From assembly GCA_963924565.1 (NCBI GenBank), contig OZ004611.1, positions 19,592,001 to 19,656,000 on the forward strand: a stretch of 64,000 nucleotides of DNA, in the 5' to 3' direction. Positions 4,001 to 33,816 of this stretch are shown here, one piece after another. A program made the position numbers and the translations under genes. This DNA comes from Ascidiella aspersa (Eukaryota). Numbering within the stretch: the first letter of the stretch is position 1; every line of letters starts with the position of its first letter. The notes below the pieces were generated by a model that saw nothing but the letters and a program-made list of their open reading frames with translations, was not told where the DNA came from and did no database searches.

Positions 4001-4091
4001 CTGATGTCCTAAGCTTTCCAAAATGTATAGGTTTGCAAATCTCCACAAAAATCCAACGAAACCATAAAATTGAACATAGTGAACCTGACTA
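1043..4091 (-). mobile_element. Academ-like DNA transposon, internally deleted (non-autonomous)
   Basis: Termini TAGTCAGGTTCACTATG...CATAGTGAACCTGACTA; imperfect TIRs of ~270 bp (1043-~1310 and ~3815-4091); ATG on both flanks (1040-1042, 4092-4094). Internal ORF has CxxC and YHxxC motifs, plus an out-of-frame Cys-rich C-terminal fragment. Confidence 0.8.
1740..3150 (-). pseudogene. Truncated Academ-type transposase: N-terminal 435-aa ORF (1843-3150) joined out of frame to a Cys-rich C-terminus (1740-~1865)
   Basis: ORF contains CVICQ, CFFCQ and DAHAIDVQYHKRC. Another frame reads QRCSCRSNNLTCTDLCLCSSQCDNDED...DDDI*. No DDE/XPG core is visible between the two parts. Confidence 0.7.
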
Positions 4092-6500: not shown

Positions 6501-7035
6501 AAAAACCGTATAGCGTTACTACATGTTGCAGCTTTAGGATGAATCAATAGAAGAATATAGCCAAACATAGATTTAGAGAAAGGGTATGAATAGGCAGTGC
6601 CAGTATTAAACACAGACAGTTTTGTTAGAATAAGACGCCATTCAACGAATTTTAGTGCAGGGTTAAGTTATTCCATAGTATTTAATGTCAAACAAGTCAG
6701 ATTTTTTTAGAGTTAGTCCTATTATCCGAGAAAACTATTTAGGTTCATTGTAATTGTTTTTTGTCACTTCGTGTATTTTAAATCAAAATAGTTAACTTCT
6801 GAATTACAAACCACACTAAACTATAAAATATTTACCCACTTAGAATCAACTTAGGCGCATTGTGTATTTGCCTGGAATACTAAAAATACAAAGCAAAGCG
6901 TATAACTGACGCTGTTTAATTGATCATCTATTAGACCAAGACGCGAAAGAAAGTCGACGCAAAATCGACAATTCTTTCAGAAAAGCGTCTTGCACTGTTT
7001 TAGTGTTTTTTTTGTTTTTTCTTAACCAAAAAGAA

Positions 7036-10000
7036 ATGAGTCATTCCGGCAGAGACCAGGATGTGAGTGACTTATAGTTGTTTTCAGATAAATGAGAATG
7101 TTATTAAACTTAAGTGTAAAGAATTAAAAAAATAACTTTTGGCGACATTAAATTATTTTAACGTTTTAACTACCTTGTAGACCTTTTTCGCAATAAGATA
7201 ATTTTGTCTGCTTTTAATTGAGTAGTCGACCAAAGCATTGTGGTATTATAGTTTAATTTGTCACGAATAAGAAACGGGACTTTTCTCATGAAAATACACA
7301 CAAGGGCGATCACAAATAACGGGGGTTATAAACTTTGTTTTTCCGCATTTACAGCTTCCTGGCGCTTACAAGCGATCTGTTGGAAAGAACGAGAGCAGAA
7401 GTTTGCCAAGAAGTGCATTCCCACCAAAGCCATCCAGATATACATCTTCGTCCTTTGTAAGTAGCCTTTCCACTCAAACCCAATCGCAATATTGAACGAG
7501 TATAGCTATAACGAATTGCCATGGTTTTAGCTGGTCCAAAACTATAGGGAGTTAATAAGGCTAATCTAATATCCATTAAAGTTACTTTAACCTTGGTAAC
7601 ACAGCTGGTTATGTCTGAAATATATTATAAACAAACACAGCCTTCGTAAAAATCATCTTAGACGATAAAATTGACTTAAAATGCTTCTAGTTTAAAGAAT
7701 CTTAAAATTGTTTAGAAAAAGTGTATAAAAGCGGGAATGAGATTAATACTGTTAAAACAACTTGTGTTTTTACCTAAAGGCAGGTTATGCGGTATTGGTC
7801 TTTCACAGAACCTGTGCCCAACGTCGACATTACAAAAAACTAAAGAATAAATAGGGATGTATGAATACGACGCATTGCGTGGGAAAGTTTACCAAACACT
7901 TGGGTATCCCTTAAACGATTTTCAAACTGATGTAAACATCCATCCGTCAAATTTTGTTATGATAAGATTGTGACAAAAAGAGACTCGAGACACTTGTTTT
8001 CGTGAAACGACGCCAAATGGAAGCGCCCTTCTAACGATAGTGTTCACGAAATTTTCTCTCATAGCGTTCAAGTTCATCGTTGTCGGACGCCCGATGCCGT
8101 TCGACCGGTTTTGACGTCACAATAGCATTTCTTACGCCCTCGGCTAATCAGAGAGGGATCACGCGCGTCGCGGGTGCGTCTCCATCCAAAAAAAAAAACG
8201 CTAGGAGAAAAACGGCTTACGCAACCTCTCTAGCCTTGCTGTTACGTAAACGCGTCGGCCAATAAATATTGATAGGACAAACTTGCGCATCAAAATAGAA
8301 AATGTAAGCCCAATTACCAAATTACTGATTTCTCTAAATGCGTATCCAACATAGCATGCTAGAGAAAACCGCTTTCTATTAGAAGTTGTTGGGTTTAAAA
8401 ATCACTATAGTTCTCAAATATTCTTTAGGTATGACGCAACCACCCATTACTTGCAGTTTTTCATTTATTTCATATACATGTGCAAAAACTAAATGGTACC
8501 TTATTGTTGCAGGCCAACTCTGACGATTTTGGTCCAGGGCATTTTAACTTTGACGACAGCGACACTTCAGGAAGGTAAGACATCGCGGTTAAATATATGA
8601 ACAAATTTCCTCATGACAAAGTGATTGCCTTTGCACTCTAATTGTACGCAAAGAATTAAATCACGAGGCTTACCAATACATCAAATTAAAATCATAACGA
8701 ACTCAAGGTGTTATTAGTAATTACTATAGAAATGTTTAAACTGCAATTGGAACAATTTAAATATGCTGAGGAAAACTATGGTTTGTTTCATTTGTCGCGC
8801 ACATAAAAACAACCGTCTTCACCAAGGAGAAATGTAAGACATCCAAAGTTACAAATCGATACCAGAGTTGGATTGATTACATTAATTTAGTTCAATTGCA
8901 ATTACAATTCATCTCTTAAACTTAAATGTTTCAATTACATTAAAACTGTAATTAATTGCATCAATTACAATAAATTACAATGGATCAAAGTTTTATATTG
9001 CTGCTGAAATATGGAAACGATGATCGATACTACTATGTATCGATAATTTTACTTTGTTTACTTTTTAAAAGTTGTTTGTGACATAACAGTGCTGTTTGTT
9101 GCATCACAGTCGATCTCGCAATGTCAGTACGTTGCCGAGCAGCGCTTATCCACGACACACGACTTCCGGGTCTTCATTCGCCAGCTCACAGCCACCAGCT
9201 CCGATTCCGGAGGGCAAGAGGAGAACGATATCGATGGGAGCCAACCATCACGCTCCCGGAAGACAGAGGAGTCGCGATCGCAGGAGGACACTGGACGCCA
9301 GGAATCAGCCACCGCCTTATACAGTAAGTGAAATGGGCATTTTTGTTTAAATAAAAAGGAGGAAAACTTATTGACTTAAATAAACAAGGGACGGAAAATA
9401 TTAGAATGAAATATTTTGTTGTAGTGATTGTTTGGTTTCGTTTTGCTAATTTGGTAACCATAATAAACTAAATGTAAAGTTAAAAGAAAATGCAAAGTGT
9501 GACAACTTTGCAAAAGAATCACCAAACCGATTTTTTTAATGTTAATTTTGACTAATTTATACAAAAAAAACTTAGATGCGATTATAAGGGAAAAAATAGT
9601 CAAAGCAATGTCTCGTGTAAGTAACGGTGATTTAGGTACATGGGCGTCAAGTATATGTTTAATGTTATAATAAGTTTCATCTGATAAACACGTTTATTGA
9701 CTCTTCGTCGTAAACAAGATACAAATATCCGCCGTACACGAGGCAAAATAAAACTTCAAGAGAAACCGACGGCAGTTAATTGCCGACGAAACAGCGCATA
9801 ATCACCGATTAGTTCACATCAAGGCGTGACGTGATATTTCGGCCCCGCGACACGTCATAAAGACACTCCTGCCCCCGTCTTTTCCGATCCTGACACAGCA
9901 GCGAGAAACACGACGGTTTATAACGGCCACGTTGGAGCAGTGAATCGATTTTGACGTTGATCTATGCTGGGAACGCCCCGGGTACCAGTTCATGGCCCGC

Positions 10001-13000
10001 CTTTAATTACCCTACGCGAAAAGCGGAACACGTTTGCCGTAAATCAAATTGAAAAGGCTCGTAAATGCATGGCGTACCTTTTGCGAATCTGAATCGTTTA
10101 TTAATCGTTTATAAAGGCGTCAAGCAAACAAACCTTTTTGCTACATTAAGTAGACTTTGCAATGAATATTATGCTAATAAAACCGTCCAGCTAAGAAAAC
10201 AATAAAGAGCTAAATACGCCTACAAAAAACTTAAACAGTTACAAAAAAATGAAAGCTACAACTATTAAATAAAAATGAAGGTCTTCCAAGTAAACCGCTT
10301 TTATAGGACAACGCACAGTGCAAACTAAATAAGCAAGGTTTGAAAAAGCTTATCACATTTTGCAAACGCCAAAACGCAAAACAAAAGAAAGCCGGTTGCT
10401 ACCTAATAGAAAATTAAACAAGAGCTTCACTCAATTTATATTACAGGTCTAGAACCGACAGTAAAATATGCGAATACCATTAAATCACAATAGCAGTTGC
10501 GCCTTAGTAAATCCAGATTCTCAATAAATGAGCACGCCCAAAAGTTTACCACGCATTAATGAGACTAAATCACTTTTTGCTGCCCGCAGGACATATTTTA
10601 GAAACGCTAAACTTTAATCCAGTAATCTGATTTTCTTCTCCTGACACCCTCCCATATTGCGTGGCATATCTTTGGGTTGCTGTTGGTTTGTCGCAAATTT
10701 TCCCAGTTGAAAAAACACCATGAAAAACATTTTATTTCGTATAAAAACGGAATAATAAAAACCAAAAACTTTCACTTCCATTTTGTACCTAAATTAGAGT
10801 TGTATTTATCAAATGACACTCTGGTTATCATATGTGCCATTTTGTACGACGGCAGTTTGTTAAGGTTGCATTGTATATTTCACATAAGGGCATTATAATT
10901 TTTTGAAATCTTTTAAATCTAAAAAAAAATCCAAAAATATTATTTGCTTTCAGATCAGCGATTCAACAAGACGAACGCTTTCCAGCGAGGATCAACACAG
11001 AATGGGCTCCGACGGTTCGAGCGTGTACAGTTCCGCCGACAGTTTCGGTAAGATAAAAACGGCGATATGCCCCTTTACTAGTATAGGAGCTATGTTTTGG
11101 GTGGTGTCAATTTGGCAAACTTTATTGTCTTTGAGTATTCAACCCCGATCAGAGCAACATGCAAATTAACTACTGCTCTTTGTAACTAGAACTAGCGATA
11201 AAGAAAAACTCGCCCTTAAAAATCCTAGGCTAGCATAGGTTGTTTTCTATATTGCAACCTAGCGCACTCCTTACTACCGATTATGCATGGTGAGGTTGAC
11301 ATCCCTTTATCGGAGTTGTGTGTTTAACACAATATTGTAATCTCCTTAAAGTGGGTTCAAAATAGTTATTAACTTTCCGTTGTTTTAAATCATTTTTCGG
11401 TTAATAGATTCTCAAGATGACCACGACGGAAGATACCCACCGAGACCACCAAAGCCGGTAAAAAAATGGATATGTACTTCAATTTTCTTGAACATTTTTT
11501 AAGCTGGTATACTAATGCCCTTGGATTGCCTAAACCCTAATCTAATGAGATCAATTTATCTCTGCAGGAAAAGTACATGAAGCGGGATGCGTCTTCTTCG
11601 AACTTTACGGGGCAGTATTACCCTGATCCAATGGAGGTAAAACGACCTGTTATTTTTTATCTTGAATCTGCGTGTGCAGGATGATAACGTGTCTAAAATC
11701 ATTTTCACTTGTTTTTATAATTATGTTTAGGAATAGCGTGGAGTGTGTCCGTTAATTACTCAGCAATTGGAATGTGTTATAGACAAACACATTAAGGGGG
11801 TAGTCATTGTAAAAATAGTAACTCTGAAGCGGTAATTTGAATAGCATTGCAAAAGCACAAGAGAGAGCCACTTACAGATTTGTTATGACTACTAGTGTAG
11901 GCCTACTATATTGTACCAAAACTGTACCAGCAGAGAATAACTTGCACAGCAGCTAGTTTAAAATGCAAAGGGTAACACGAAACTTTCAATGTTATTTAGA
12001 GCGCCGATATGAGCAGACTACACTCGGGGTACTCTGAAGACACGAACACAACCTTGACTGGCGGCGATAATCGCCCAACTGATATCGATGAGCTGGCAGA
12101 GTACTTCAACAAGTAAGCTCTTTTAATCGTTTGTGGCTAATTAACTACAGCAAAACTGGTTAAAATAGCTGTATCGAAAAGAAAAATGGCCAACCCAGCA
12201 TTGCCATTTAAAGCTTAGAACTAAACAAGAAGTAACAATAACCTTGTGCTGACACATTCTTTATCGATTGTGCAGAAAACTTGACGACGTACAAAGACAA
12301 GCGGATCATGCTCTAAGTGAGCTGCAAGATGGTAGACGCGATAGGGTAAGAACAACCAGTCGATTTATAGATAGCAATTGTTAGATGTGTATGTATGTAT
12401 GTGTCCATGATTGCATGCTCTTTGATTTGTATAGCTGTTTTCGTTAATTTAAATGACAGTTATATCCAACAGTTTTTGTTTAGCGTTTGAATGTAATTGG
12501 ATGGTTTCCTCGTTCACATATATTTTAGAATTATGCTAATATTAGACTATTCTTTGACTATTCTTCTGCTATAACTTTAGAAACTGACACCTTTTATATA
12601 CAACTTGTAATAAACACAGTTTCTAGTGTGATGTACGTTTTTTAAGGTCATATAGAATAATTTAAGACTTACTGAAAGAGGAACTATTGCTTCGAAAACA
12701 AAACCACTATTTTACCGGTCAATGTTTGGCGGACAGAATTACGTTCTCCCAACGTGTATATAAGCGCAAAACGAGAATAACAATATACCAACGTGTATAT
12801 AAGTGCAAAACGAGATACCAATATCCCTTTAACTAACCTTAGTAAAATCTTTTATCGCTGTTTTACAGTCGGTCACCGACGACTCGTCAATGTACAGCTA
12901 CAACAGGGGTCCTCCGGGAGGGGGATCTTACAACAGGAGAGGAAGAGAGCCTTCTTCCAGGGCAGTTCGTCCCAGCAACCGTGCCGCTGGAATCTCGTCG

Positions 13001-16000
13001 GATGCATCCACCATCACTCCGACGAACAGCAGATCATTTAGACCGGTCAGTTTTCGCCCGAGCTGAGTTTGGCCATAACTTATGAATGTGCATGTGGGTT
13101 GTTTTAATGATAAGAGCCTTTAAGGATGTTGTGAGGTTTCGCTATGTCTTTTAAGCTTAACAAATAATTTTTGAGAAAAAAACGGTCATTAAATGAAAAG
13201 TGTGTCATTTCCCTGAAATAATGCAATTTTAAGTAACTCTATCTTAACATCTCCATAGCATTACCCTATGAAAAGGTATGCGTGGTACTTTAATGTGGGT
13301 TTTGTCACTTTTGAAAGTGACGAATTTAAAGATTTTCGACTTGTCAATACATATTTTGTCGGTAAAAAATACCCTGTTGTTTTCTCTGGAAGAAACTTTA
13401 AGTCTGTAAGACATTGGCGACCCGCTAAGCTTAACTTAATCCAAATGCCACACTCTGGAAAACAGCATTGCAGCGCTTTAGAGTCACAACTTCTATGTTT
13501 TTAGACTGAGTCGTCCAACCAAACGGAGAGCAGCATCTCGGCAGTGCGCGACGAACTGGACAGCCTTAAGTTCCAGCTGTCGAAAGGATTGGAGAACTTG
13601 GAAAGCCAGGGCGCGTCGTCGCACAATATGGAAGAGATGGCCGATTACTTCAGCAAGAGACTCGAAGAATGCCAGAAGCAGGTATGAACAATTAACTATA
13701 GCGTTGATGATAACTGCACAAGGCTCTATGTTGTATTTTCCCAGTTTTGTTACATTCCTTAATGAGATTTTCTTTTTGTCAAGATCTGTATTGTCAAAAA
13801 CTGTATTCAATTTTTTTTTTTTTTTTTATATCTGTCTCTGTTTGCACAACTTTTCCAGATTGTTCAACAGAATAGAGGTCATTAAAGGTGCCAAGATTTT
13901 AGTTCAAATAAATAGACTGCAAAGTTATAGGTACATTATTCGTGTTTTGAATCGTTTAAAGAATCGTTTCTGTTGTTTAGGTTTATAGCGCCGTCAATCA
14001 CGTTCAAGGCCAGGTTGGAGAAATGCGTCAGCAACAAGCACCTTCCGGAAGGGTAAGACAATTTGAATTTAAATAAACATTCTCCTGAAACAACCTAAAA
14101 TACTTGAAAATTTGGTTTGCACAAATTGACCACTACTTGTTCTATGAAAGGTGTTTCGTCTTAACACGTCGAAGTAGTATTTTTGGTCACAAGGTCCACT
14201 CATCGAGCGTTTATTTTTACCCTCTGCCGTCACTTAAATATCGGCGTGTCGCACGTTTCAGGGGCGTCGTGGAGGGGAGTGGGACGCCAGCCAGGAGGAA
14301 TACTACGACAGCAGCGACAGCGGTATCGGTCCGCGAAACTTGACCATCCGGCCGATGACCAGGGCGCACGCCGAAGCAGTTAACAACGCTTGTGAGTTTG
14401 TAATTTCTCCCTTGGTATTTGTGCCCGTCTTAAAAGTACTCTCGGCCCCGGCGATTTTAGTGCAGTTAGCATTTTACGCAGTTATGTGCAGTGGATTAAC
14501 TTTAAGTACGGTTCAGCGCACAACAACGTTCGTTGGCCAAAGTAGCAGTCATTTTATAACATAGTCATTAAATTTATTTAAATGTTGTTCAGAGAGATAT
14601 TCAGTATGTCACAATGAGTTAACGCAGTGGTTCCTAACCGGGATGCCGCGGCGCCCTGGTGTGCCATTTCTACAGCTCAAGGGTGCCGATAGATATTTGA
14701 GAATATTTAAAAACCTGATTTTTGCTCAATTGGTACAACTATTTGTTTACGATTAGAGACCATTATATCAGATGACATTTTCCAACATGTTTAAAGTTGA
14801 TTGTGTTTTGCCAGTTCCATTTATAGTGACATTTCAGTAAAATACTCAACAAAAATTCCAGTCGGGGTGCCGAAATTCTATTTGTTATTTTTTAGGGGTG
14901 CCGTAAGGTACAAAAGGTTACGAATCACTGAGTTAACGCATCATTTTCGCAATTCGACCTATTTGTGTTAATAATTCCTAACGCGCAAACCATTTTAACG
15001 ACCTTCAATCTTATCCAGCCATCGTCACACCATCGGCGCCTCCAGCTCCCAGAAGACGCCACGACCAGCGCTCGGATCGCCACGACTACAATCCTCCGAT
15101 GGCAATGCATCCCAACGAGGATCAGGAATCGTTCGCCAGGATGGACGGCATGATGCCGCAGGAAAAGATGGAGATGGCCGCTCCGCCTCCGGTGTACCGG
15201 GACGCGGTGCCGAGGAACAAGATGATGGCAGACGATCTCGGATCAGACGACGAAGAGTTTTGGGACGACTTTGAAGAGGTGAGAGTTATTTTGCGTCATT
15301 TAAATAGGGACTAGCGATTTGAATGCTTCTCGGGTATACGAGGAGTTTTGGGACGAATTTGATGAAGTGGGAGTTACATTGTGTCATTTATATAGTGGTT
15401 AGCGATTTGAATGCTCCTCGGCTACCAAAATTTCGAAAAATTGTTTACGGAGTATAACCTTTTTAGGTTTTGGTATCCAGACGGATCCAGTAAGTTCAAA
15501 AGAGGTGATAAACCTGATGCTAATTGTTAGGATTTGTAAACTAAAGTGGGCGATTTCTTAAGGAAACTTTAACATACGTCCATGAACTTGCCATATACAG
15601 ATCACAATGCAGTTTAATTTGCTGCATTAAAAAACTTATTGTTAACAAAAAGCTCAATCAAAACGTATATTCAAATACAAATGTTGGAAAACGGTCAACA
15701 AAAAACAAATAGCCACTGCGAGTATACAGTCGAAATTTGACAAGAAACAACGTATTACCTCTGTTAAAAACTTTCCTTCGACGTTTATCATATAGTCGAA
15801 GTTTTGCACGAGTTTTAACATCTTCGTGCTTTACGCAGTTTATCGACGACGACACCCCAGCTCCGGAAACCTCGATTCCTGTCCCCAAGATCACGCACAA
15901 GACCAACAACTATATGTACCAGGTGGTCTACGTGGTGTACATTATGTCGTTTCTCGCCTACGTCTACGTGCGAATCCAGTTTACGCTGGACGCGCCCGGA

Positions 16001-19000
16001 TTGAATCGGATCTATTGTATTGTTGTCGCCATCTTGGAAATCATCACCGCCCCATCGCTCATTCTCCAGGTAAAAATCTTTTATGAACCGTTTTTCTATT
16101 TTCTTCGTAATTATGATTTCAAAAAAAAATATTTGATTTTTTATATTTTTGCCGATCGCAACAGTTAATATTTATAGACCAAGTCGCCTTTAATTTTAGT
16201 ATAGTATATAATTTGTATATAGAGGCTGAAGCGTAAGTTAATCGGAGTTGTTTAGCAGAGATTAAACATAATTATCACCCACTTTGTATAAAGCATTTAC
16301 TCGTTATTTGTGCAATGCTGTTGTACAAGCCACGTTACGCCGCCCTTGTAACGCGTTAAATTTTCTTCAACATTGCATAACAAACTGGAAGTAGACGTGC
16401 CGAAATTATAGCGGCTGACATTTCGGCCAACTAATTGCGCTTCCATATAAGCGCCCCAGGCTACAAAACACGTATATGGGTTTTAGCTGTGACTCAGCTC
16501 TGTTTGGTTTATATCTTCGGATTACGAGATTTCCAAGTAAATGCTCCACTGGTGAACTTTAACCTGGCTTGTTTTTTATATTTTGACGGCGTGTTAGCAT
16601 TTATGAAAGGCCACATACTTGGGAGGATACCGAGCTATTAATTTGTAAAGCGATTCATGCAACTAAAAAAATGCAAACCTGTTAAAAGTTAATAAGAAAT
16701 ATAGTGAACTGTGAATAATTGCAAGCCTACAATTCCGATAAAAGGATTTTTTTCATAACAAATCTAAATTGTTAATTGAGCTTCTTACATAAACAGTTTC
16801 AACCTTAAAAATTCAACGTGTTATATTTAGAAGATGTGAGTGTTATTTAGTCTATAAATTTCCCGATATAGGACGTACAAATTGAAACATTTTGTTAACA
16901 GGGTTTGTGTCTGTGGCGTTGGATTTCACGTGACCCTCCCCCACAAGATGCATTCGAAAACCCCAAGTTCCATACCGCCCGTATCATGGTTCCAACTTAC
17001 AAGGTAATTGATCAAGCAATTGTACCCTGTTTTGAGAAAAAATACAGTTAAAATAACACCAGGAAACAAGTTTAAATCATGAGAAAATTTATTGTGTATG
17101 AAGGGGTCCTATACATAAAAAACTCCTATACATACAATAAAATGTAGAGGAAACTTTTTGTTTTTAACTTAGATCAATCTATAGGCTACAAAACAAAAGG
17201 GTAACGAGTAGAAATACTTTCTAGAATTTATACAGACATTTAATAAGTTTTGAATTCATGAAAAGAAAAATTGGCGAATCCAAATTCACTAACCGTTTTA
17301 AGTATCTAACAGTTTTTACAATCCATCCTAAGCTTTACGAATTGTTCTAAAACAGTTTTTACAATCTATCCTTACTAATTGTTCGTTTGAATACTTAAGT
17401 TTAATCGAACGGCCGCTTTTCGTTGTCGCTACGCAGGAACCGCTTGAAGTGGTAGCCGGAACAGTGCACGAGATTATTCACATGGATCTTCCTCCGTCTT
17501 TCCACGTTCACGTCTATGTGCTGGATGACGGAAGAAGAGAAATGCTTGAAAACTGGGTCCTCTCGAAACGAACAAAGAGGTGAGATTTGTTTGGTGATAG
17601 CACGTCATTTTAGAATACCATGTGTGTGCTTTTAATGCATGAAAATGTTTTATTTTACGAAAAAAAAAGTCTTCCGTGATGAAAATAGTTTCAAAGTGGT
17701 ATTGTTTTACTATATTTTATGTTTGTGAAATTTTTACACGTTGTTTTCAAATTTATATGTCTATAAGTCCAATGTTAGTCTTAAAACATATAAAAGTAAA
17801 TTTACAGAAATATATAAAGTAGCTCCCGTAGTAATCGATGGACAAGGTTTCGATAACTACGGTTTTTTCCATGTTTTAAATACAATAGATCAAAAAGTTT
17901 ACTTGGGAAACAGATTTGGTTCAAGAATTTAATTTATTTGAGGCAAATGTCGAACTTTTCATTTCTCCAAACTGAGTCAACTTGACAAATATGTGTGCTG
18001 CGTAATAAAATTACAGCAATGACAACTCTTCTGTTTTTTATCCAGATGCGTGTACCTGCATTACGTGGCCCGACCCAAACTGCCTGGTGTGCCTCACCAC
18101 GCTAAGGCCGGAAACATCAACCATACCCTACATTACATCTTCGACGACGCCTACCCCGAGCAAGAGTGCGTAATCATCTTCGATGCCGACTTTATGCCTA
18201 GGTAAATCACAATCAAACATCTCCACTAGACGGTATTCTATCTTTTTGACTGTCATTGTGGGGTGAGACTATTGGGTAATTTTGTTTAATATGCTGTGCA
18301 CGGGGATAGCGTTGGGTTAGAACGGCGATACTTAAAATACAGCAAGGTATATCCTATCTCATAATATATGAAGACGCTTTTTAGAGACAAAGTATGGCAA
18401 TTTTGTTGACCATATGTGACATCAATCTCCAATCATTTTCTAACGTTTTACTATCCATAAAAAAAAAGCATAAACTTCATTTTCGCCTTCACAGGAGAAA
18501 CTACCTGCTGCGTGTGTTGCCCGTGTTCTCGGAGAAGCGTACCCGGCCGCTGGCCCTCGTGCAAACGCCGCAGTTCTTCTACAACGTGAACCCGGAAGAA
18601 GATGTGTGGGACCACTTGAACGTCTCCTTCTTCCATCGTATCGAGCCGAGTCTGGATCGCTGGAGCGCCGTCAACTGTTGCGGAACCAACTTCGTGGTGC
18701 GCGCCGACGCCCTAAAGGACGTGGGCTACTTCCCGGTGGGCTGTCTCACCGAGGACACCCTACTATCCCTCAGGCTCTGTACCATGGGCTGGGGTGTGGC
18801 TTACCATCACGAAGTACTCGCCATTGGCCAATCGCCCCACGAGATCACCGAGATTTTCAAGCAGCGTTCTCGTTGGTGCAAAGGCAACTTGCAGATCTTC
18901 CTCGACGAATTCCCGCTCATGCAGTCCGGTCTGTCGCTGTCGCAGCGCATCTTCTACAGTTCGTGCGGCTTCAACTACTTCTGCGCTTCCATCTCGATTC

Positions 19001-22000
19001 CCTTCTTCCAATTGGTGCCGGCCTGGGCTATCTTCTTCGGTCTCTGGCCCGTGTCGGAAATTGGACTCGAGTTCGCGTTCGCCTTCTTCATCTACTACCT
19101 GTTGGGCAACGTTCTGTTGCTCTTCCCACCTCCCGGCTTCGGCATTCGTGACATGTGGAACGGTGAGCTGGCCTCCACCAACCTCTGGTTCACCTACTTC
19201 AATGGTGTGCGCCGTATCGTGGGAACGAAGCTGCTAAAAGGAAAAGGTAAGACAGCAAATTCCTATTACTACTGATTTGCAAATATGCCGAAGGAATAAA
19301 CTATGTACCCGTGTACGCTTTTCATATCCACAGTATGTCAGTTTGGTTAACGGCTGTAATAGAACGTGTTCTCAATGAGTTAGTATTGTAAATCTGTCTT
19401 AGGCTTATACTTTTTATATAATTAGTATAAGTCGCTTATTTTCTGGGCAAAAATGACTGGTCAAGTTAATAAGAATTGGTTTAGGAGGGCGTTTTTTTCA
19501 ATTACTGAAACTCCGTATATAATGTACAGTGCACATCATACATTGTTGATTTATCGTTAATTTGTGTCGGTTAAATTCGGTTAGAAACACAAATAAAATT
19601 AAAATTATTTCAGGCGAGCTGACATTCAAAACGACCAAGAAGAAGACAGACGAGGACGAAGAAGGTTCCAACGTTGGTTTTCAGAAAGAGGACGTGCGTG
19701 CCTGTTACATGCATTTCATTATGTTCTTCATCATGTTGGTCACCATTGTTTACGCCATCGTCCAAGGTGAGTAGCTGACATTATTTAATTCTGTTACCAT
19801 CGTTAAGGACAAGCATCCGAAATTGCTTAATTTTGCTGTTTTTGTTCGTCCGATAAGACATTTTTTACCTTTATTGCGAAACGAATGGCACCTAGTAGTA
19901 TATTGCGTGGAACAGCTTGTTTAATTTCTGTACTAAATCTGCTTTCAAATGAACAGTATTAAATTAGGTTAGTTTATTAGACGTGGTCACTACTTCTTGT
20001 CAGCACATCGAAGTGATTTCTAAATCTTGTATCCTTGAACTCTTAGTACCCTGAGACGCCTTGTTTTACCACTGATTTTTTTCACAGCCGCCATTGCCAA
20101 GGACGTGAAGTTCTACTTTTACTACATGTACATGATCGGTATGTCCTGGGCCCTGATCAACATGACCCCGTACCTGATCGTGGTAATCTACTGCTGGTAC
20201 CGGGTTCGAATCCCGGGCCTGATCGTCGCTTGCTTCAGAAACGTACAGCTGCTGCTGCGTCTGGTTTGCGCTGCCCTGATCATGGTACAGGCTTTCACCA
20301 CAAGAAACTTGACGGAAAACTTTATCTGCCCCCACGAATATACAGGAGTATTAGGTGAGGCCTATAACTACTAGGATACGTAGGATCAAATATGTAGAAC
20401 AATAAATAAAACGCAAGAGACAAGCACAGCAGAAACTTAATGTATGCGCACTTATACACCAAAAAGGTCGAGTATATCGACATCATCTTATTTAGGACGT
20501 TTCGATACGAACTTGTATCATTTTCAGTTAATGTCACATCTTAATCAGGAAGCTGTCGATCTACTCGACGTTTTTGGCTTTGCAATTCATTATCAAGCTA
20601 CATTACAGATCCGTACATATTGTTATCAAACTTATACACCAATTCTGAAAAGTCGAACTCAAATACTCATTGATTGGTACGTTTATAGGCTAAAAATAGT
20701 ATTTTAGCAAGATCTCTTTAACACTTTACTCCCTACAGGCTCAAGTCCTTTGGCTATGGTGAAGACAATGGACGCGGTTTCCAAGCTTCAAGTAAGCAGG
20801 AACTCTTTCTGGCTGCTGGGGCTTAAGGACGATTTCTACACGATGCAGCAAATCAAGAGGACCGCTTGCGAGAAGGACGAAGTGCCAATCATCGTATTTT
20901 TCATGCATCCCTCGCAAGGACTTGCCCTCGACTCAGAAGCTGGTCATTACATGCCCGAGCACAGAATTGGTGAGTGCAGTAGCTTACTTGTAACTTAAGT
21001 TACAGGACCGGTAAAAATCGCGACATATACTATAATATAACGAACTGGAGTTACTGCTGTGCATGCTACCTTAGTTAGAATGTAGGTCAGATTTTTTAGT
21101 ACTGTGGCCCAAACCGGTTAAACCGTTTTTTTAACTTACATCTTAATAGAGAAAAAAAAGAAACCTAATGTGAGGTATAAACTTTGCGTTTATCGGCATA
21201 TTGTGTATTTATACTGTATGCTCTGTAAGTAAATTTGCCATCGACAACGATTAAAATATACCAAAATATCCAGTTTCCCAAATAATTAAAATATTAAAAC
21301 AAAGTTTCTGTCAATTTTAAATCGAAAAGTTATCAGACCTACATTTTATGGATATATAAACACAAAAATTTACAAGTTTTGTGACATTTGACAGATACTT
21401 GGGAGGAATACGACAAAAAGATGTTGAACTACGCCGAGCATCTGTCGGACGTTCCTTCGTTAATTGTCATGGAACCGTCCTTGCTCATGCACACGTTTAA
21501 CTCAAAAACGGACTACCACAACACTGATTATCAGGTAACGGCTTATAGCCTGAATTCTGAAATTGAATAGTAACATGCTTTGTAAATTTGCTGCCAACAC
21601 AAGTACAAAAAATGTGTAAGCATATCACGTTAACAATGTTTAAATTGTATAATGGTACAGCATGTGGTACAAATCTAACAGCACTAGGAAGTTATACAAC
21701 TGATTAACAGTTCCCAAGCAAAATCATCTTAGAATATTAAAATCGCCAGAGTATGTTTTAGTATTTGTAATACATTCCCATAACGCAACTTTTTCAACAA
21801 TATATGAATGTCTTCCGCAGGTTGCCTTCTCGCAGCGCGTCGCCGACGTGGTGAACATGTTTCCAAAGTCGTGGGTTTACGTGGACGCTGGCAACGCCAT
21901 GTACCTACAGTGGCAGGTCAACCTGGACCACGTGATAGGCGTCATGAAGAGCATGCCGCCCGACATCCGCGGCTTCTCGATCAACGTCGGTTCGTTCGTG

Positions 22001-24019
22001 AACAGCACTTTCAATAAGAACCTGGCCGAGGAGATTCACTGTCAGACCGGGCTGCATTACATCATTGACACGTCGCGTAACGGCGGCAAGTTTTCGGAGA
22101 GGTGAGACCAGTGTTTGAGTAGCCGTTAAATTCTGTCGAGGCTACTTTCTTTAAAACGTGTATCGTTGTTCTTACACAAGGTTCTTTAACCATCCCAACC
22201 CTTAAAAGTGAGCTACCACTTTTTAATCGTTTTTTCACACAACGTTTTTATTTTAATGAAATCTATTTCGAGAATCCGATCTTGCGAACTATTTACGTTT
22301 TTTAGTTTATTTTATCATTAAACAGACAGGGTCGAGATAGAAATATATTGATAGGTTTTTGTATAGAAAATAAAATGTATATATTCATAGGTTTTTGTAT
22401 GGGCTTTAAATAAAAACCCTCAAACCCATTCTTATTCAGTGGGTCTCGGTATTGTAGGAAACAGAGAAAGGCTTAATACGGTGGCAGGAGCAAACAGTTA
22501 ATCGCGAATCATCTAACTCTAACGCCTTTTTCTAACCAATAATGCAAGTCAATGCGCTGAAACTGACAGCTCTCCTTGGTTGCTGCAGGTCCCTTGAACA
22601 GATCAACCTGTGCACCTACGACCCACCCTTTGTCATCAACGGCAGTCACCCGGCTTGGGAGGTCGGAGCGAACACCAAGACCCTGACAGCGCAGAGCATC
22701 TTAACGGGAGCCGGCGCCGTGAAACCAGTTGAAACTCCAACCGAAGGTATGCTTTTATTTGCTCACTCTTTTGTTTTACAGTCCAGTTTTTGCTAGAAAA
22801 AAAAAAAACGAAAATCTGATTTCGAAAGTTCTAACTTGTAAGACAGAAAATATTGAAATCGATTTTTGTAATAATAGCGGTTATGTTTGGGAATTTATAG
22901 CCCTATATTATACATATAACCCATTAGACATTATGCTGCTTGTAACGTTTTAAAGTAGCATGTCAGCTATTAACAAATCTGTTCCCGCCTCAAATTTCAG
23001 GCCGTACAAGAGTTTTAAAATATAACAGCTAGTATACTTCGCGCGTTTACAGGCTTGTTAAAAACCAAAAAACATTTTTTTATCCAATAGATCAAACCTC
23101 GGTACGTTAATGCCCACGTAAAGTTAAGCAAAAAGCAAACTTTTCTTTTTCGTCGTTGAAAACTAACACGAATTTTACGCGCAGCATCAAATGCCAGCGA
23201 AAGAGCGACTGAATAAATTTGCATTTTATTTCCAGCTGTCCCAGCGGCCAGGCGAAAGCGATGGGTTCTGCAAAGCGGCAACACAGGAAACGAGCCAGTG
23301 TTGGGAGAAGGTCCAGCAGCCGGCGCAGGTAAGCCACTAGAAACTCTGACTAAAATTCAAGTTCTGACTAAATTGGTTAAACTGCTAGCCAAAGGTTGTC
23401 GGACTTAAATGTCCCAACTACCTTTTTTGGTACGTATCTCTCTATACTTTCCAAATCGCAACTGGTTGTAGAGAAACGTTGATTTGATACTTCAATGAAG
23501 CCGTATTCGTACATTAGGTGTAACCTACAGTCATTTAATGAGATTTAAAAAGTGCAAACTTGTCACACGAAAAGTAGTGTACAAAGGGCCACCCCACAAC
23601 CGCGCGATTACACGTCGTAGTTTGTGGGAGAGTAATCAATCCCAAGCTTACAACTTTTGGGTTGATTAGCAACGAAACTAATACTAACGCTTTTCCCCAC
23701 AGTAAACACGGGCACCGGCGACAGTTTCTACTCGTACGGCGGCGCGGCCGGCACGGGCGTCAACACCGGCACCAACTACGACTACACTGCCGACGGCACC
23801 GCCACGTCAAGTGCGCTCTGCGTCACCACCGAGACGGACGGCCTGGACGCATACGCGTGGGTCAAGACGCCGGGCGAGTCGGACGGGCGCATGTTCACGT
23901 CCGGTACCTACCATCCATGCCTGATGAACCACTTCTCCGAGTGCAGCGAGACTTGCCCACAGTACGTGCCCAAGATATCCGGCGAGTTTCAGCGTTCCGA
24001 CACCTGTTCGTGCAGTTAG
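7036..24019 (+). CDS. CesA: Tunicate cellulose synthase (GT2 + C-terminal GH6 fusion), 27 coding exons, ~1546 aa
   Basis: Phase-consistent GT-AG exons: 7036-7062, 7355-7456, 8513-8574, 9110-9323, 10954-11047, 11408-11457, 11568-11636, 12000-12112, 12276-12345, 12869-13045, 13505-13681, 13981-14052, 14262-14391, 15019-15278, 15839-16069, 16902-17003, 17437-17579, 18046-18201, 18495-19246, 19614-19766, 20088-20354, 20739-20969, 21395-21534, 21821-22101, 22589-22746, 23236-23328, 23703-24019 (4641 nt, open to TAG). Cellulose synthase motifs: VPTYKEP, VLDDG, HAKAGN, FDADF, QTPQ, TED, QRSRW. GH6 motifs: YVDAGN, IRGFSINV, IIDTSRNG, DAYAWVKTPGESDG. The first exons are less certain than the core. Confidence 0.95.
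8060..8270. promoter_or_regulatory. GC-rich intronic candidate cis-element (AP-2 + CRE)
   Basis: TGACGTCA at 8112-8119, GCCCTCGGC at 8136-8144, CCAAT at about 8259, within CesA intron 2. Confidence 0.35.
12749..12826 (+). repeat. Two-copy ~39-bp tandem repeat
   Basis: CCAACGTGTATATAAG(C/T)GCAAAACGAGA occurs twice. Confidence 0.75.
14625..14930. mobile_element. hAT-type MITE in CesA intron 13
   Basis: CAGTGGTTCCTAACC...GGTTACGAATCACTG; 8-bp TSD AGTTAACG on both sides; GTGCCG subterminal motifs. Confidence 0.8.
15252..15422 (+). repeat. Tandem duplication of the CesA exon 14 3' end and donor region
   Basis: GAAGAGTTTTGGGACGACTTTGAAGAGGTGAGAGTT...TAGCGATTTGAATGCTTCTCGGG is repeated with divergence at 15340-15422. 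Confidence 0.8.
15839..20354 (+). other. CesA: CesA GT2 catalytic core plus transmembrane region (exons 15-21)
   Basis: D,D,D,QxxRW signature (LDDG, DAD, TED, QRSRW) spread over exons 17-19. Two hydrophobic helices precede the GT domain and about five follow it. Confidence 0.95.
20455..20620 (-). repeat. Family A hammerhead-type repeat (degenerate core) in CesA intron 21
   Basis: Minus strand ATTAA-CTGAAAA-TGATAC-AAGTTC-GTATC-GAAAC-GTC, followed by an inverted partial copy at 20563-20620. Confidence 0.6.
20739..24019 (+). other. CesA: CesA C-terminal GH6 cellulase-like domain (exons 22-27)
   Basis: VMEPS (canonical EPD), YVDAGN, RGFSINVGSF, YIIDTSRNG, WVKTPGESDG; Cys-rich C-terminus. Confidence 0.9.
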
Positions 24020-33300: not shown

Positions 33301-33816
33301 AGATAACACCGAAATTAAACTTCGAAGCACAGATTTATAGTAATAAACATATTTTTTTGAACTCGTTGGTATTTTTGTAATATGGCTATACAATAAAAAA
33401 AACTAAAAAATATGGCTTCTTTAAAGTTAACGTTATGCCAAGCTATATCCAATAAAAAGTGTCTTTATTCAGACACGAGTGAGATTAGACACACCTCGCT
33501 TTTATTTCATTTTTACTACGCCATGTTTTGGTGCCAAATTAAAAATTAGTATTTCCTCAGTAGAAGAATCCGGGGTCATGGTATACCTGTTATGGGCGGT
33601 CTTTTGAACGCTGAGAGATACACTAATCAACAGATTGCCTCCGACGGCCAACGACATGCCGATCAAATGGCGTTGATTCCATTTGGGGAAAGGCGACGTG
33701 GTATTCGTAACGTTCGACATTGACGTATTACCAGAAAGTCCAAAGAGGGGTCCGTTATTCAGAGCAGTGTTCAGCACTTCTGACGTGAGGTTTGTCAAAT
33801 TTCCTAGCAGCGCCAT
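27316..33816 (-). CDS. NIPA-like magnesium transporter (closest in motif to NIPAL2/NIPAL3), 7 coding exons, ~464 aa
   Basis: Exons on minus strand: 33587-33816, 33012-33240, 32221-32366, 29689-29896, 28317-28498, 28240-28266, 27316-27688. NIPA motifs: GNLLISVSLSVQK, WWWLGMMLMVLGEMGNFMAYGFAPASLVAPLG, QIKFLNRAMQLYDVSDVVPVNFIFFTVSAILAGAMFYKEF. Ser-rich C-terminal tail. Confidence 0.9.
31897..32160. repeat. Divergent inverted pair of minimal-hammerhead repeats (family A) in a NIPA intron
   Basis: Minus copy CTGATGA-TAATAC-AAGTAC-TTATC-GAAAC-GTC (31985-32016); plus copy CTGATGA-TGATAC-AAATAC-GTATC-GAAAC-GTT (32078-32109); shared downstream sequence. Confidence 0.7.

What the first reader, a model, noticed from the sequence alone, without database searches (positions are those of the whole stretch)
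7036..24019. Animal cellulose synthase: horizontally acquired GT2-GH6 fusion now split by 26 introns
Seen: a complete spliced gene fusing a bacterial-type cellulose synthase core to a GH6 domain, with no PilZ domain. Known: tunicates are the only cellulose-making animals; their CesA is attributed to transfer from bacteria (probably actinobacteria, where GT2 and GH6 genes are adjacent). The system itself is described. What may be new here is this species' complete exon structure and locus context.
Basis: partly seen in the sequence, partly recalled or inferred. Interest (0 to 1): 0.75.

Follow-up and report, generated by a model that had tools for sequence, protein, structure and literature searches.

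The report
Sea-squirt cellulose synthase gene, 27 exons
This is the known cellulose-making gene of sea squirts, intact and expressed in one more species, and its closest relatives outside sea squirts appear to be similarly fused genes of single-celled amoebae, not bacterial genes.

Summary
Window 7036-24019 (+) carries a 27-exon, 26-intron gene: 4,641 coding bases, 1,546 codons, every intron GT..AG, no in-frame stop. It is collinear with the Ciona, Molgula and Styela CesA proteins. The GT2 core keeps DDG, DAD, TED and QRSRW. The C-terminal GH6-like domain has Ser where GH6 enzymes have the EPD Asp. No PilZ domain was found.

Spliced contigs of run X3 confirm 10 of the 26 junctions, exons 4 to 14. 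The other 16 rest on orthologues. The system is already described, and the long N-terminal form is already in databases, so the gene itself is ordinary.

This genome also has a second full CesA paralogue on contig C7 and a GH6-1-like locus on C6.

One lead is worth following. GT2-GH6 fusions with the same five-cysteine C-terminal tail occur outside tunicates: in the vampyrellid amoeba Leptophrys vorax and on eukaryote-like environmental contigs. No paper on this turned up in four searches. The fusion may therefore predate tunicates. The GT2 tree, however, puts tunicates outside the protist group.

The parts
7036..7062 (+). exon 1 (ATG; MSHSGRDQD)
   Evidence: Same N-terminus as the Ciona CesA proteins. 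Donor GTGAGT, phase 0. In-frame stop upstream at 6907. No read evidence.
7355..7456 (+). exon 2
   Evidence: tblastn with P0153, 78% identity. AG/GT borders, phase 0/0.
8513..8574 (+). exon 3
   Evidence: tblastn, 67% identity. AG/GT borders.
9110..9323 (+). exon 4 (PPPY at 9309-9320)
   Evidence: tblastn. Donor 9323 joined to 10954 in an X3 spliced contig. Motif coordinates.
10954..11047 (+). exon 5. First exon of the block (exons 5-12) missing from the 1,277-aa Ciona cDNA protein.
   Evidence: X3 joints 9323->10954 and 11046/7->11407/8.
11408..11457 (+). exon 6
   Evidence: X3 joints. 84% identical to P0153.
11568..11636 (+). exon 7
   Evidence: X3 joints.
12000..12112 (+). exon 8 (ends ..ELAEYFNK; resembles exon 11)
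   Evidence: X3 joints. Off-diagonal tblastn block to P0153 residues 342-359.
12276..12345 (+). exon 9
   Evidence: The donor at 12345 was fixed by the X3 joint 12344/5->12868/9. My first splice scan had missed it.
12869..13045 (+). exon 10
   Evidence: X3 joints.
13505..13681 (+). exon 11 (coiled-coil-like; ..EMADYFSKRLEECQKQ)
   Evidence: X3 joints. 69% identical to P0153.
13981..14052 (+). exon 12. Last exon of the block missing from the Ciona cDNA protein.
   Evidence: X3 joints.
14262..14391 (+). exon 13
   Evidence: X3 joints 14051/2->14261/2 and 14391->15019.
15019..15278 (+). exon 14 (PSAP 15030-15041, PPVY 15186-15197, acidic stretch)
   Evidence: Acceptor confirmed by X3. tblastn. 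Motifs.
15839..16069 (+). exon 15: two hydrophobic helices ahead of the GT2 domain
   Evidence: 82% identical to P0153. Two Kyte-Doolittle peaks.
16902..17003 (+). exon 16 (start of GT2, ..ARIMVPTYK)
   Evidence: 74% identical. AG/GT borders.
17437..17579 (+). exon 17 (DDG at 17524-17532)
   Evidence: 84% identical. Motif.
18046..18201 (+). exon 18 (DAD at 18182-18190)
   Evidence: 91% identical. Motif.
18495..19246 (+). exon 19: GT2 catalytic core (QTPQFF, TED 18748-18756, QRSRW 18862-18876) and two hydrophobic helices
   Evidence: Pfam GT2 and Cellulose_synt. Aligns to BcsA 4hg6/5ej1 at 4e-22 with TED and QxxRW in register. 96% identical to P0153.
19614..19766 (+). exon 20 (LTFKTTKK 19619-19642, acidic loop, one hydrophobic helix)
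   Evidence: tblastn. Hydropathy. No PilZ.
20088..20354 (+). exon 21: two hydrophobic helices between GT2 and GH6
   Evidence: 90% identical. Hydropathy. No Pfam family.
20739..20969 (+). exon 22: start of the GH6-like domain (FFMHPS where GH6 enzymes have ..RDC)
   Evidence: 73% identical. Alignment of the orthologue to PDB 6fao.
21395..21534 (+). exon 23 (VMEPS 21466-21480: Ser in place of the Asp of the GH6 EPD motif)
   Evidence: Read directly. The identical orthologue stretch aligns EPS to EPD of 6fao and 1up0. PMC7464555 section 3.3.
21821..22101 (+). exon 24: GH6 core (DAGN, SRNGG 22073-22087)
   Evidence: Pfam GH6 6.1e-8. PDB 1up0 at 1.1e-6.
22589..22746 (+). exon 25 (CTYDPP 22611-22628, then the tunicate-specific insert)
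   Evidence: tblastn. Motif counts.
23236..23328 (+). exon 26 (insert; RRKR 23250-23261)
   Evidence: 39% identical to P0153. Motif.
23703..24019 (+). exon 27 (PGESDG 23870-23887, five-Cys tail 23918-24013, TAG stop)
   Evidence: Pfam GH6 1e-4, below the cut-off. 60% identical to P0153. Tail motif.

Best explanation
The stretch is the CesA (cellulose synthase) gene of an ascidian. The species is neither C. intestinalis nor C. savignyi.

How the protein is built and works:
- It begins with about 530 residues that match no Pfam family. This tail is presumed cytoplasmic. It is Ser/Pro/Arg-rich and holds two coiled-coil-like repeats.
- Two membrane helices follow.
- Next comes a cytoplasmic family-2 glycosyltransferase domain with the D, DxD, TED and QxxRW residues. 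These are the residues that, in bacterial BcsA, bind UDP-glucose and extend a beta-1,4-glucan chain.
- Then come five more hydrophobic helices. By analogy with BcsA they form the channel through which the chain leaves the cell.
- With seven helices in all, the C-terminal GH6-like domain ends up outside the cell. It lacks the EPD Asp (Ser here) and the RDC Asp, so it most likely does not cut cellulose. It more likely holds or orders the emerging chains. A five-cysteine tail behind it probably forms disulphides.
- There is no PilZ domain, so control by cyclic-di-GMP is not expected.

Shown: the gene structure, the domains, the motifs, orthology, and splicing of exons 4-14. Inferred: the membrane topology, the channel, the role of the GH6 domain and the role of the N-terminal tail.
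For: - Exon model: 27 exons, 26 GT..AG introns, 1,546 codons, no stops.
- 26 collinear tblastn blocks to XP_009858898.1. Collinear blocks to C. savignyi Q6RCS2, Molgula E7FJ00 and Styela.
- GT2 and GH6 by Pfam on single exons.
- Exon 19 aligns to BcsA structures 4hg6/4p00/5ej1 at 4e-22 with TED and QxxRW in register.
- Exon 24 matches GH6 structure 1up0 at 1.1e-6.
- EPS aligns to EPD of 6fao and 1up0 in the orthologue, whose motif stretch is identical to the window's. PMC7464555 section 3.3 says the catalytic Asp is not conserved in tunicate CesA.
- Seven hydrophobic segments: 2 in exon 15, 2 in exon 19, 1 in exon 20, 2 in exon 21. PMC6523144 states seven TM.
- 10 of 26 junctions are seen as spliced contigs in X3 only, at depth 41.8-98.6.
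- Unnamed transcript-like contigs of other tunicates (P0271, 1,524 aa on a 5,162-bp contig; P0272) cover GT2 and GH6 in one ORF.
Against: - 16 of 26 junctions, including every junction between the GT2 and GH6 parts, have no read evidence in this species.
- The run on record as RNA (X4) gave no read on any exon.
- X3 is of kind '?'. I take it to be RNA-derived from its spliced contigs and its depth profile.
- The last-exon GH6 match is below Pfam's cut-off.
- 7 of the first 10 and all 10 of the second batch of segments have no Pfam family.
- Topology rests on a crude hydropathy scan.
- No enzymatic or expression data for this species were seen.
- A second paralogue exists, so this copy need not be the only source of cellulose.
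Confidence: 0.93

Rival explanations
1. Exons 1-14 (7036-15278) belong to a separate upstream gene for a disordered, coiled-coil protein. On this view the true CesA starts near exon 15, and the 27-exon model is a fusion of two genes.
For: None of the N-terminal segments has a Pfam family. The C7 paralogue shows no match to the N-terminal tail in the 30 kb fetched. The protist relatives have short N-termini.
Against: The cDNA-derived Ciona protein BAD10864.1 starts with the same MSR..LPGAY..PPKPSRYTSS N-terminus and runs on into GT2 and GH6. C. savignyi Q6RCS2 (1,509 aa), Molgula E7FJ00 (1,480 aa) and Styela (1,490 aa) are equally long, and they match window exons 8, 10/11, 13 and 14 as well as the core. 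Exon 14 ends and exon 15 starts in phase 0 at GT/AG sites. X3 joins exons 4 through 14.
Confidence: 0.03
2. The window copy is a decaying or redundant duplicate, and the working cellulose synthase is the paralogue on contig C7.
For: A second GT2+GH6 gene lies at G000:C7:28499872-28515477.
Against: The window copy has an intact 1,546-codon frame. Its exon 19 is 94-96% identical to all named ascidian CesAs. Spliced contigs were found for it. The C7 copy is the diverged one, at 40-84% identity per block.
Confidence: 0.03
3. Origin as in the literature. Two adjacent actinobacterial genes, a GT2 and a GH6, entered a tunicate ancestor and fused there. The GT2-GH6 fusions of protists are then an independent convergence, or came from tunicates.
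For: - PMC6523144 section 3.3 and passages of PMC13390645 state the bacterial origin and the tandem Streptomyces genes CAB65566/CAB65568.
- In the GT2 trees tunicates fall outside the clan that holds the protist fusions: 99/93 with LG+G4 on 93 rows and 99/94 with LG+C20 PMSF on 49 rows.
- Forcing tunicates together with the protist GH6-fusion clade costs 17.7 lnL, p-AU 0.039.
- The GH6 tree cannot tell, because it has only three clans.
Against: - All 12 tunicate and all 20 protist fusion sequences that reach the GxSDG motif carry five Cys behind it. The tail pattern is found in 11 of 12 and 20 of 20. All 10 bacterial GH6 have one Cys and none has the pattern.
- CxYDPP is present in 12 of 12 tunicate, 17 of 20 protist and 0 of 10 bacterial sequences.
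- 11 of 20 protist fusions keep EPD, as bacteria do. 0 of 12 tunicate sequences keep it, so the protist forms look less derived.
- By HMMER score the nearest non-tunicate hits to exon 19 are these fusions, at 1e-47 to 1e-41.
- None of the 8 plasmid GH6 loci fetched has an annotated neighbouring GT2 gene. Two of the 8 have no usable annotation.
- None of the 36 bacterial or archaeal loci matched beyond residue 636 of the query, so none reached the GH6 part. That scan used only two GT2 patterns.
Confidence: 0.35

Closest known systems
Ciona intestinalis CesA (BAD10864.1/NP_001041448.1, 1,277 aa; predicted isoform XP_009858898.1, 1,551 aa) and C. savignyi CesA (Q6RCS2, 1,509 aa)
   Same: Same order of parts from the first residues to the five-Cys tail. 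26 collinear exon blocks. 95-96% identity in the GT2 core exon. The same EPS substitution. No PilZ.
   Different: Per-exon identity falls to 37-50% in the tail exons 4 and 14 and to 39% in exon 26. The published Ciona gene is given as 21 exons and 1,277 aa. That cDNA protein lacks residues 121-399 of the long form, which correspond to window exons 5-12 plus the edges of exons 4 and 13. In this species the block is included in the X3 contigs. This genome has a second paralogue, whereas PMC6523144 Table 1 lists one copy for each Ciona.
Bacterial BcsA (Rhodobacter sphaeroides, PDB 4hg6/4p00/5ej1)
   Same: GT2 fold with the QTPxFF, TED and QxxRW motifs in register, followed by membrane helices. 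The mechanism of processive synthesis and export is taken from it. That BcsA works this way is recalled knowledge, not from a call.
   Different: No PilZ domain. Two rather than four helices ahead of the GT2 domain (the BcsA count is recalled). A GH6-like domain and a long N-terminal tail are added. Whether a BcsB-like partner exists was not examined.
Non-tunicate GT2-GH6 fusions: Leptophrys vorax EP00475_P041454 and _P009043 (P0191, P0195), and unnamed environmental proteins P0008-P0021 and P0192-P0201
   Same: Same order of parts: two helices, GT2, FK[VAT]TxKK, helices, GH6, CxYDPP, GxSDG, five-Cys tail. They align over the full length with Ciona CesA. Pfam GT2 and GH6 are above the cut-offs and there is no PilZ.
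   Different: About 30-40% identity to tunicate CesA. Short N-termini. No 130-180-residue insert between SRNG and GxSDG (45-66 residues instead). EPD kept in 11 of 20. Intron-poor genes on compact eukaryotic contigs. In the GT2 trees they group with GT2-GH9 fusions and GT2-only protist proteins, not with tunicates.
Tunicate GH6-1 (stand-alone GH6-like gene; PMC7464555, PMC10334666)
   Same: A third GH6-like locus in this genome (G000:C6:9834679-9838335) matches exons 24 and 27 at 56% and 44% identity. Its last exon carries PGESDG and a five-Cys tail.
   Different: No GT2 match was found there in the own-genome search with exon 19. I did not show that it is the GH6-1 orthologue. No GH6-1 sequence was on hand.

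Membership tests
Tunicate CesA (GT2-GH6 cellulose synthase) | GT2 core with the D, DxD, TED and QxxRW catalytic motifs | tested here: met
   DDG 17524-17532, DAD 18182-18190, TED 18748-18756, QRSRW 18862-18876. Pfam GT2. In register with BcsA.
Tunicate CesA (GT2-GH6 cellulose synthase) | GH6-like domain at the C-terminus of the same reading frame | tested here: met
   Pfam GH6 on exon 24 above the cut-off, and on exon 27 below it. PDB 1up0. The frame is continuous through exons 19-27. There is no read evidence for these junctions in this species.
Tunicate CesA (GT2-GH6 cellulose synthase) | GH6 catalytic Asp of the EPD signature not conserved | tested here: met
   VMEPS 21466-21480. Orthologue alignment to 6fao and 1up0. 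PMC7464555 section 3.3.
Tunicate CesA (GT2-GH6 cellulose synthase) | Best hits are tunicate CesA and the row groups with them in a tree | tested here: met
   Exon 19 lies inside the tunicate clade, 100 SH-aLRT.
Tunicate CesA (GT2-GH6 cellulose synthase) | Seven transmembrane helices | tested here: inconclusive
   Seven hydropathy peaks of at least 1.6, counting the two overlapping peaks in exon 21 as one helix. No dedicated predictor or structure was used.
Tunicate CesA (GT2-GH6 cellulose synthase) | Splice sites in the GH6 part shared with other tunicate CesA genes | not testable with these tools
Block borders in L066-L068 are similar, but they were not resolved to the base.
Tunicate CesA (GT2-GH6 cellulose synthase) | Makes cellulose; expressed in epidermis | not testable with these tools
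   Only splicing of exons 4-14 was seen, in one run of unknown tissue.
Bacterial BcsA-type cellulose synthase | C-terminal PilZ domain (c-di-GMP control) | tested here: not met
   No PF07238 on any of 20 window segments or on P0152 and P0270. Bacterial hits do carry PF07238.
Active GH6 cellulase | Catalytic Asp residues (EPD, and RDC upstream) | tested here: not met
   EPS in place of EPD, and FFMHPS where 6fao has NIPNRDC. The Asp in PGESDG is kept.

The most novel reading that the evidence does not exclude
The GT2-GH6 fusion did not arise in tunicates. A ready-made fused gene already existed in single-celled eukaryotes: GT2, membrane helices, GH6 and a five-cysteine tail. It is seen today in the vampyrellid amoeba Leptophrys vorax and in many uncultured, intron-poor eukaryotes. 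The tunicate ancestor took it, or a close forerunner, from such a lineage or from a donor the two share. Tunicates then lost the EPD Asp, gained the 130-180-residue insert and the long N-terminal tail, and duplicated the GH6 part to give GH6-1.
Probability: 0.5. Interest if true: 0.8.

Novelty: new member of a known kind. Interest (0 to 1): 0.42.

Why it matters
As a gene, this is one more orthologue of a textbook case of gene transfer into animals. Its value is a base-exact 27-exon model with splicing support for the N-terminal block, and the note that this species has two CesA genes.

What could matter more is the origin. Papers up to 2026 describe the C-terminal GH6 domain as found only in tunicate cellulose synthases, and describe the gene as bacterial. 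The 2020 survey lists GH6 as 'not yet observed' in Rhizaria. Fused relatives with the same tail in a rhizarian amoeba give a concrete alternative donor group. With them, the question of where animals got cellulose synthesis becomes testable using existing protist data.

Tried and rejected
- I first suspected that exons 1-14 were a separate gene (statement). I rejected this.
- I first called the species 'Ciona-like' and the N-terminal tail Ciona-specific (after). Both were wrong. At 50% clustering all ascidian CesAs sit behind one representative. Molgula and Styela proteins are equally long, and the window is about as far from Ciona as from Molgula and Styela in the core exons.
- I first took P0008-P0021 for other tunicates, perhaps larvaceans. 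I rejected this after true tunicate CesAs were named at 62-85% identity to Ciona and two members of the other group were traced to Leptophrys vorax.
- Two contigs from the metagenome scan, L054 and L085, did prove tunicate-like (59-84% identity to Ciona in the GT2 core and 45-49% in the last blocks). I left them out of the non-tunicate set.
- In one search four tunicate fragments (P0288-P0291) and two fragments of the P0021 cluster (P0265, P0266) were printed under the non-tunicate heading. They are not in the counts I give.
- Rows dropped before the trees: near-duplicates, long branches and partial rows, as listed in the scripts.
- The protein-atlas search on P0013 gave only generic GT2 clusters and no taxon of use.
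- The GH6 search found just two stand-alone GH6 proteins. The GH6 tree therefore has only bacterial outgroups, taken from plasmid records. It has no fungal, algal or GH6-1 rows and cannot test sisterhood.
- Exon 23 alone is too short to find GH6 in the PDB.
- The literature searches found nothing on CesA isoforms. Searches found no paper on GT2-GH6 fusions outside tunicates. That holds only for the library searched.
- Supplements were closed, so Tables S1-S3 of PMC7464555 (taxa used, shared splice sites, locations) were not seen. They may list relevant eukaryotic GH6 proteins.
- The joined spliced protein of the window was never built, printed or searched. Every search with window sequence used a single exon or a single stop-free segment. 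Full-length comparisons used public orthologues.

Full report
WHAT IS THERE

The window has no N. On the + strand between 7036 and 24019, stop-free segments carry recognisable cellulose-synthase sequence. Pfam on single segments found:
- GT2 and Cellulose_synt on 18385-19272.
- GH6 on 21704-22102, above the cut-off.
- GH6 on 23666-24016, weakly (22.7 bits against a cut-off of 27).
The other 7 of those 10 segments matched nothing. A second batch of 10 segments (N-terminal exons, exon 20, exon 25) matched no family above its cut-off.

An all-library HMMER search with the largest exon gave 4,358 proteins at E <= 0.001. The best full-length hit was P0002, 95% identical. P0002 is 'ciCesA protein [Ciona intestinalis]' XP_078487465.1. 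Its cluster also holds the cDNA-derived BAD10864.1 (1,277 aa) and the predicted isoform X1, XP_009858898.1 (1,551 aa).

EXON MODEL

tblastn with the 1,551-aa form gave 26 collinear blocks. I set the borders by frame arithmetic on GT and AG sites, without joining any sequence. One donor, at 12345, was corrected from read evidence.

The result is 27 exons and 26 GT..AG introns. It totals 4,641 nt = 1,546 codons plus TAG, with no internal stop and no stop in a split codon.

The joined protein was not built or searched. All full-length work used public orthologues.

TRANSCRIPTS

The look-up of sequencing runs listed three runs of kind '?' (X1-X3) and one RNA run of the same species label (X4). That stretch was the doubtful part, because it holds the block that is absent from the Ciona cDNA.
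- X3 has spliced contigs with GT..AG joints at all 10 junctions from exon 4->5 to 13->14. Depth is 41.8-98.6, high over exons and low over introns.
- X1 and X2 cover the stretch contiguously and lack those joints.
- X4 laid 24 reads, none on an exon.
- No exon-skipping joint was seen. Contigs drop rare forms, so this does not show that skipping is absent.

The remaining 16 junctions rest on collinearity with cDNA-derived orthologues and on transcript-like contigs of other tunicates that hold GT2 and GH6 in one ORF (P0271, P0272).

ANATOMY AND LIKELY WORKING

- The GT2 motifs DDG, DAD, TED and QRSRW are present.
- Exon 19 aligns to BcsA structures at 4e-22 with the motifs in register.
- A hydropathy scan gives seven hydrophobic segments: two before the GT2 domain and five after it. 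PMC6523144 reports seven (passage).
- That count would put the GH6-like domain outside the cell.
- In that domain the EPD signature reads EPS, and the upstream RDC is missing. PMC7464555 section 3.3 reports the same for tunicate CesA.
- A five-Cys tail ends the protein.
- No PilZ was found.

I therefore read the protein as a processive beta-1,4-glucan synthase whose outer GH6 domain binds rather than cuts. The topology and the roles are inference.

THE N-TERMINAL TAIL

The 1,277-aa Ciona cDNA protein lacks residues 121-399 of the long form. On the window these residues correspond to exons 5-12 plus the edges of exons 4 and 13.

Exons 5-12 sum to 822 nt and are flanked by phase-0 borders, so skipping them would stay in frame.

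Long forms exist for C. savignyi (1,509 aa), Molgula (1,480 aa) and Styela (1,490 aa). The tail is therefore general in ascidians and already in databases, although the text I read gives '21 exons, 1277 aa'.

Two earlier notes of this scan point to PPxY/PSAP motifs and an RRKR site. I located these motifs but did not test their function.

SPECIES AND COPIES

The window is G000:C5:19592001-19656000 of a 308.6-Mb, 75-contig assembly.

It is neither Ciona species. Per-exon identity to either Ciona CesA ranges from 36% (exon 14) to 96% (exon 19). The species stayed coded.

The genome holds a second GT2+GH6 paralogue at C7:28499872-28515477 (- strand). It gives 16 blocks at 40-84% identity and has extra introns inside the exon-19 equivalent.

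A third locus on C6 matches exons 24 and 27 and carries the five-Cys tail. It is probably GH6-1.

Downstream of CesA lies a NIPA-type magnesium-transporter gene on the - strand.

RELATIVES OUTSIDE TUNICATES

Besides tunicates, the representative library holds ten GT2+GH6 fusion representatives at 38-41% identity to exon 19, and a set of GT2+GH9 fusions.
- Aligned with Ciona CesA they share the full order of parts, the CxYDPP motif and the five-Cys tail.
- A profile search found more of them (85 proteins at E <= 1e-30 among 7,074 candidates).
- Two fused members and three GT2-only relatives are EukProt entries of Leptophrys vorax. This is a vampyrellid amoeba: Rhizaria, Endomyxa.
- Pfam confirms GT2 and GH6 above the cut-offs in both fused members.
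- True tunicate CesAs are 62-85% identical to Ciona, so this group is not tunicate.
- Environmental contigs of the group look eukaryotic. Three are mRNA-sized with one long ORF, and two of these have AATAAA near the 3' end. On L044 a RabGAP-TBC/EF-hand gene lies 28 nt from the CesA-like ORF.

Motif counts are:

| Feature | Tunicate | Protist fusions | Bacterial GH6 |
|---|---|---|---|
| Five Cys after GxSDG | 12 of 12 | 20 of 20 | 0 of 10 (one Cys each) |
| CxYDPP | 12 of 12 | 17 of 20 | 0 of 10 |
| EPD kept | 0 of 12 | 11 of 20 | 10 of 10 |

Sequences without a GxSDG match were left out of these counts: 3 of 15 tunicate rows, 1 of 21 protist rows and 1 of 11 bacterial rows.

RESULTS AGAINST A SIMPLE 'PROTIST DONOR' STORY

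- In GT2 trees the protist GH6 fusions group with the GT2-GH9 fusions and a GT2-only group that includes an MMETSP protein. This clan excludes tunicates: 99/93 on 93 rows with LG+G4 and 99/94 on 49 rows with LG+C20 PMSF.
- Tunicates sit on a stem of 1.1-1.25 changes per site, between that clan and the bacterial-like rows.
- Forcing tunicates together with the GH6-fusion clade costs 17.7 lnL, p-AU 0.039.
- The GH6 tree has only three clans (tunicate 100/100, protist 95/91, bacterial 100/99). It lacks fungal, algal and GH6-1 rows, so it cannot show sisterhood.
- The bacterial scan used two GT2 peptide patterns only. It found 36 loci, at 24-32% identity, and none matched beyond residue 636 of the query, so none reached the GH6 part. 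It does not exclude a bacterial fused gene.
- One microbial-mat contig (L093) has GT2 and GH6-with-tail in two ORFs 13 nt apart, at low coverage. This may be a frameshift, an intron or a truly unfused state.

If the GT2 topology is right, the simplest reading is that the fusion is older than the split between tunicate CesA and the whole protist clan, with later loss or exchange of GH6. GT2-only proteins nested among the fusions show that such loss happens.

LITERATURE

I read the abstract, results and passages of PMC7464555. [quoted passage not shown] Its Table 2 lists GH6 in SAR-Rhizaria as 'Not yet observed'.

I read the abstract, the Results and Discussion section and passages of PMC6523144, and passages of PMC13390645. 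Matthysse 2004 and Nakashima 2004 were not held.

Four searches found no paper on GT2-GH6 fusions outside tunicates.

VERDICT

The gene is a further member of a well-described kind. The lead on the origin deserves a proper phylogenetic study.

Noticed in passing
G000:C7:28499872-28515477 (- strand; loci L123-L125): A second full CesA paralogue (GT2 plus GH6) in the same genome. It gives 16 tblastn blocks to P0153 residues 533-1545 at 40-84% identity. The exon-19 equivalent is split by extra introns. No match to the N-terminal tail was found in the 30 kb fetched.
   Followed up: partly
G000:C6:9834679-9838335 (- strand; loci L136, L140): A third GH6-like locus. It matches exon 24 at 56% and exon 27 at 44% identity. 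Its last exon has a Q/N-rich stretch, then WLKTPGESDG and a five-Cys tail. It is probably the stand-alone GH6-1 gene.
   Followed up: partly
proteins P0191, P0195 (Leptophrys vorax), P0008-P0021, P0192-P0201; loci L037-L044: GT2-GH6 fusion proteins with the tunicate-type CxYDPP motif and five-Cys tail occur in a vampyrellid amoeba and on compact, intron-poor eukaryotic contigs. L044 has a RabGAP-TBC neighbour.
   Followed up: yes
proteins P0007, P0027, P0030, P0033, P0034, P0041, P0222, P0226-P0229: A sister set of GT2 cellulose-synthase-like proteins is fused to GH9 instead of GH6 (Pfam PF00759 2.7e-61 on P0027). Some lie on contigs of 44-234 kb. Their organisms are unknown.
   Followed up: partly
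L093:2-4722 (microbial-mat metagenome contig): A GT2 ORF (2-1804) and a GH6 ORF with EPD and the five-Cys tail (1818-2933) lie 13 nt apart in different frames. A second GT2 gene starts at 3760. Coverage is low, so this could be a frameshift, an intron or an unfused state.
   Followed up: partly
L071-L073 (contig Ga0210059_1000025 and two others): In another ascidian-like genome a CesA-like paralogue lies about 17-20 kb downstream of CesA on the same contig. It is 67% identical in the exon-19 equivalent, and no GH6 match was found in the stretch held. The window has no such tandem copy.
   Followed up: partly
window 14600-14999 (intron 13): A very high-copy repeat. Word depth is above 12,000 in X1 and 25,000 in X2, against about 50-100 elsewhere. 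Many loose ends fall at 14811-14849, and the few X4 RNA reads land here.
   Followed up: no
window 1063-4061: A transposon-like unit about 3 kb upstream of the CesA ATG. Inverted repeats 1063-1347 and 3778-4061 (246 nt at 89% and 47 nt at 94%) flank an intact 437-codon ORF on the - strand (1846-3156). That ORF has no Pfam family.
   Followed up: partly
window 28316-33879 (- strand): A NIPA-type magnesium-transporter gene convergent with CesA. Three stop-free segments match PF05653 at 1e-23 to 8e-14, and a fourth matches only weakly (0.007, below the cut-off).
   Followed up: partly
window 12000-12112 and 13505-13681: Exons 8 and 11 share a motif, ..(D/E)E(L/M)A(E/D)YF(N/S)K.., seen as off-diagonal tblastn blocks. 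This suggests an internal duplication in the N-terminal tail.
   Followed up: no
window 9200-15199: The genomic runs X1 and X2 differ from the window at many sites. Most of their contigs are 95-99% alike, and there are several indels of 1-39 nt. The population or individual is highly polymorphic.
   Followed up: no
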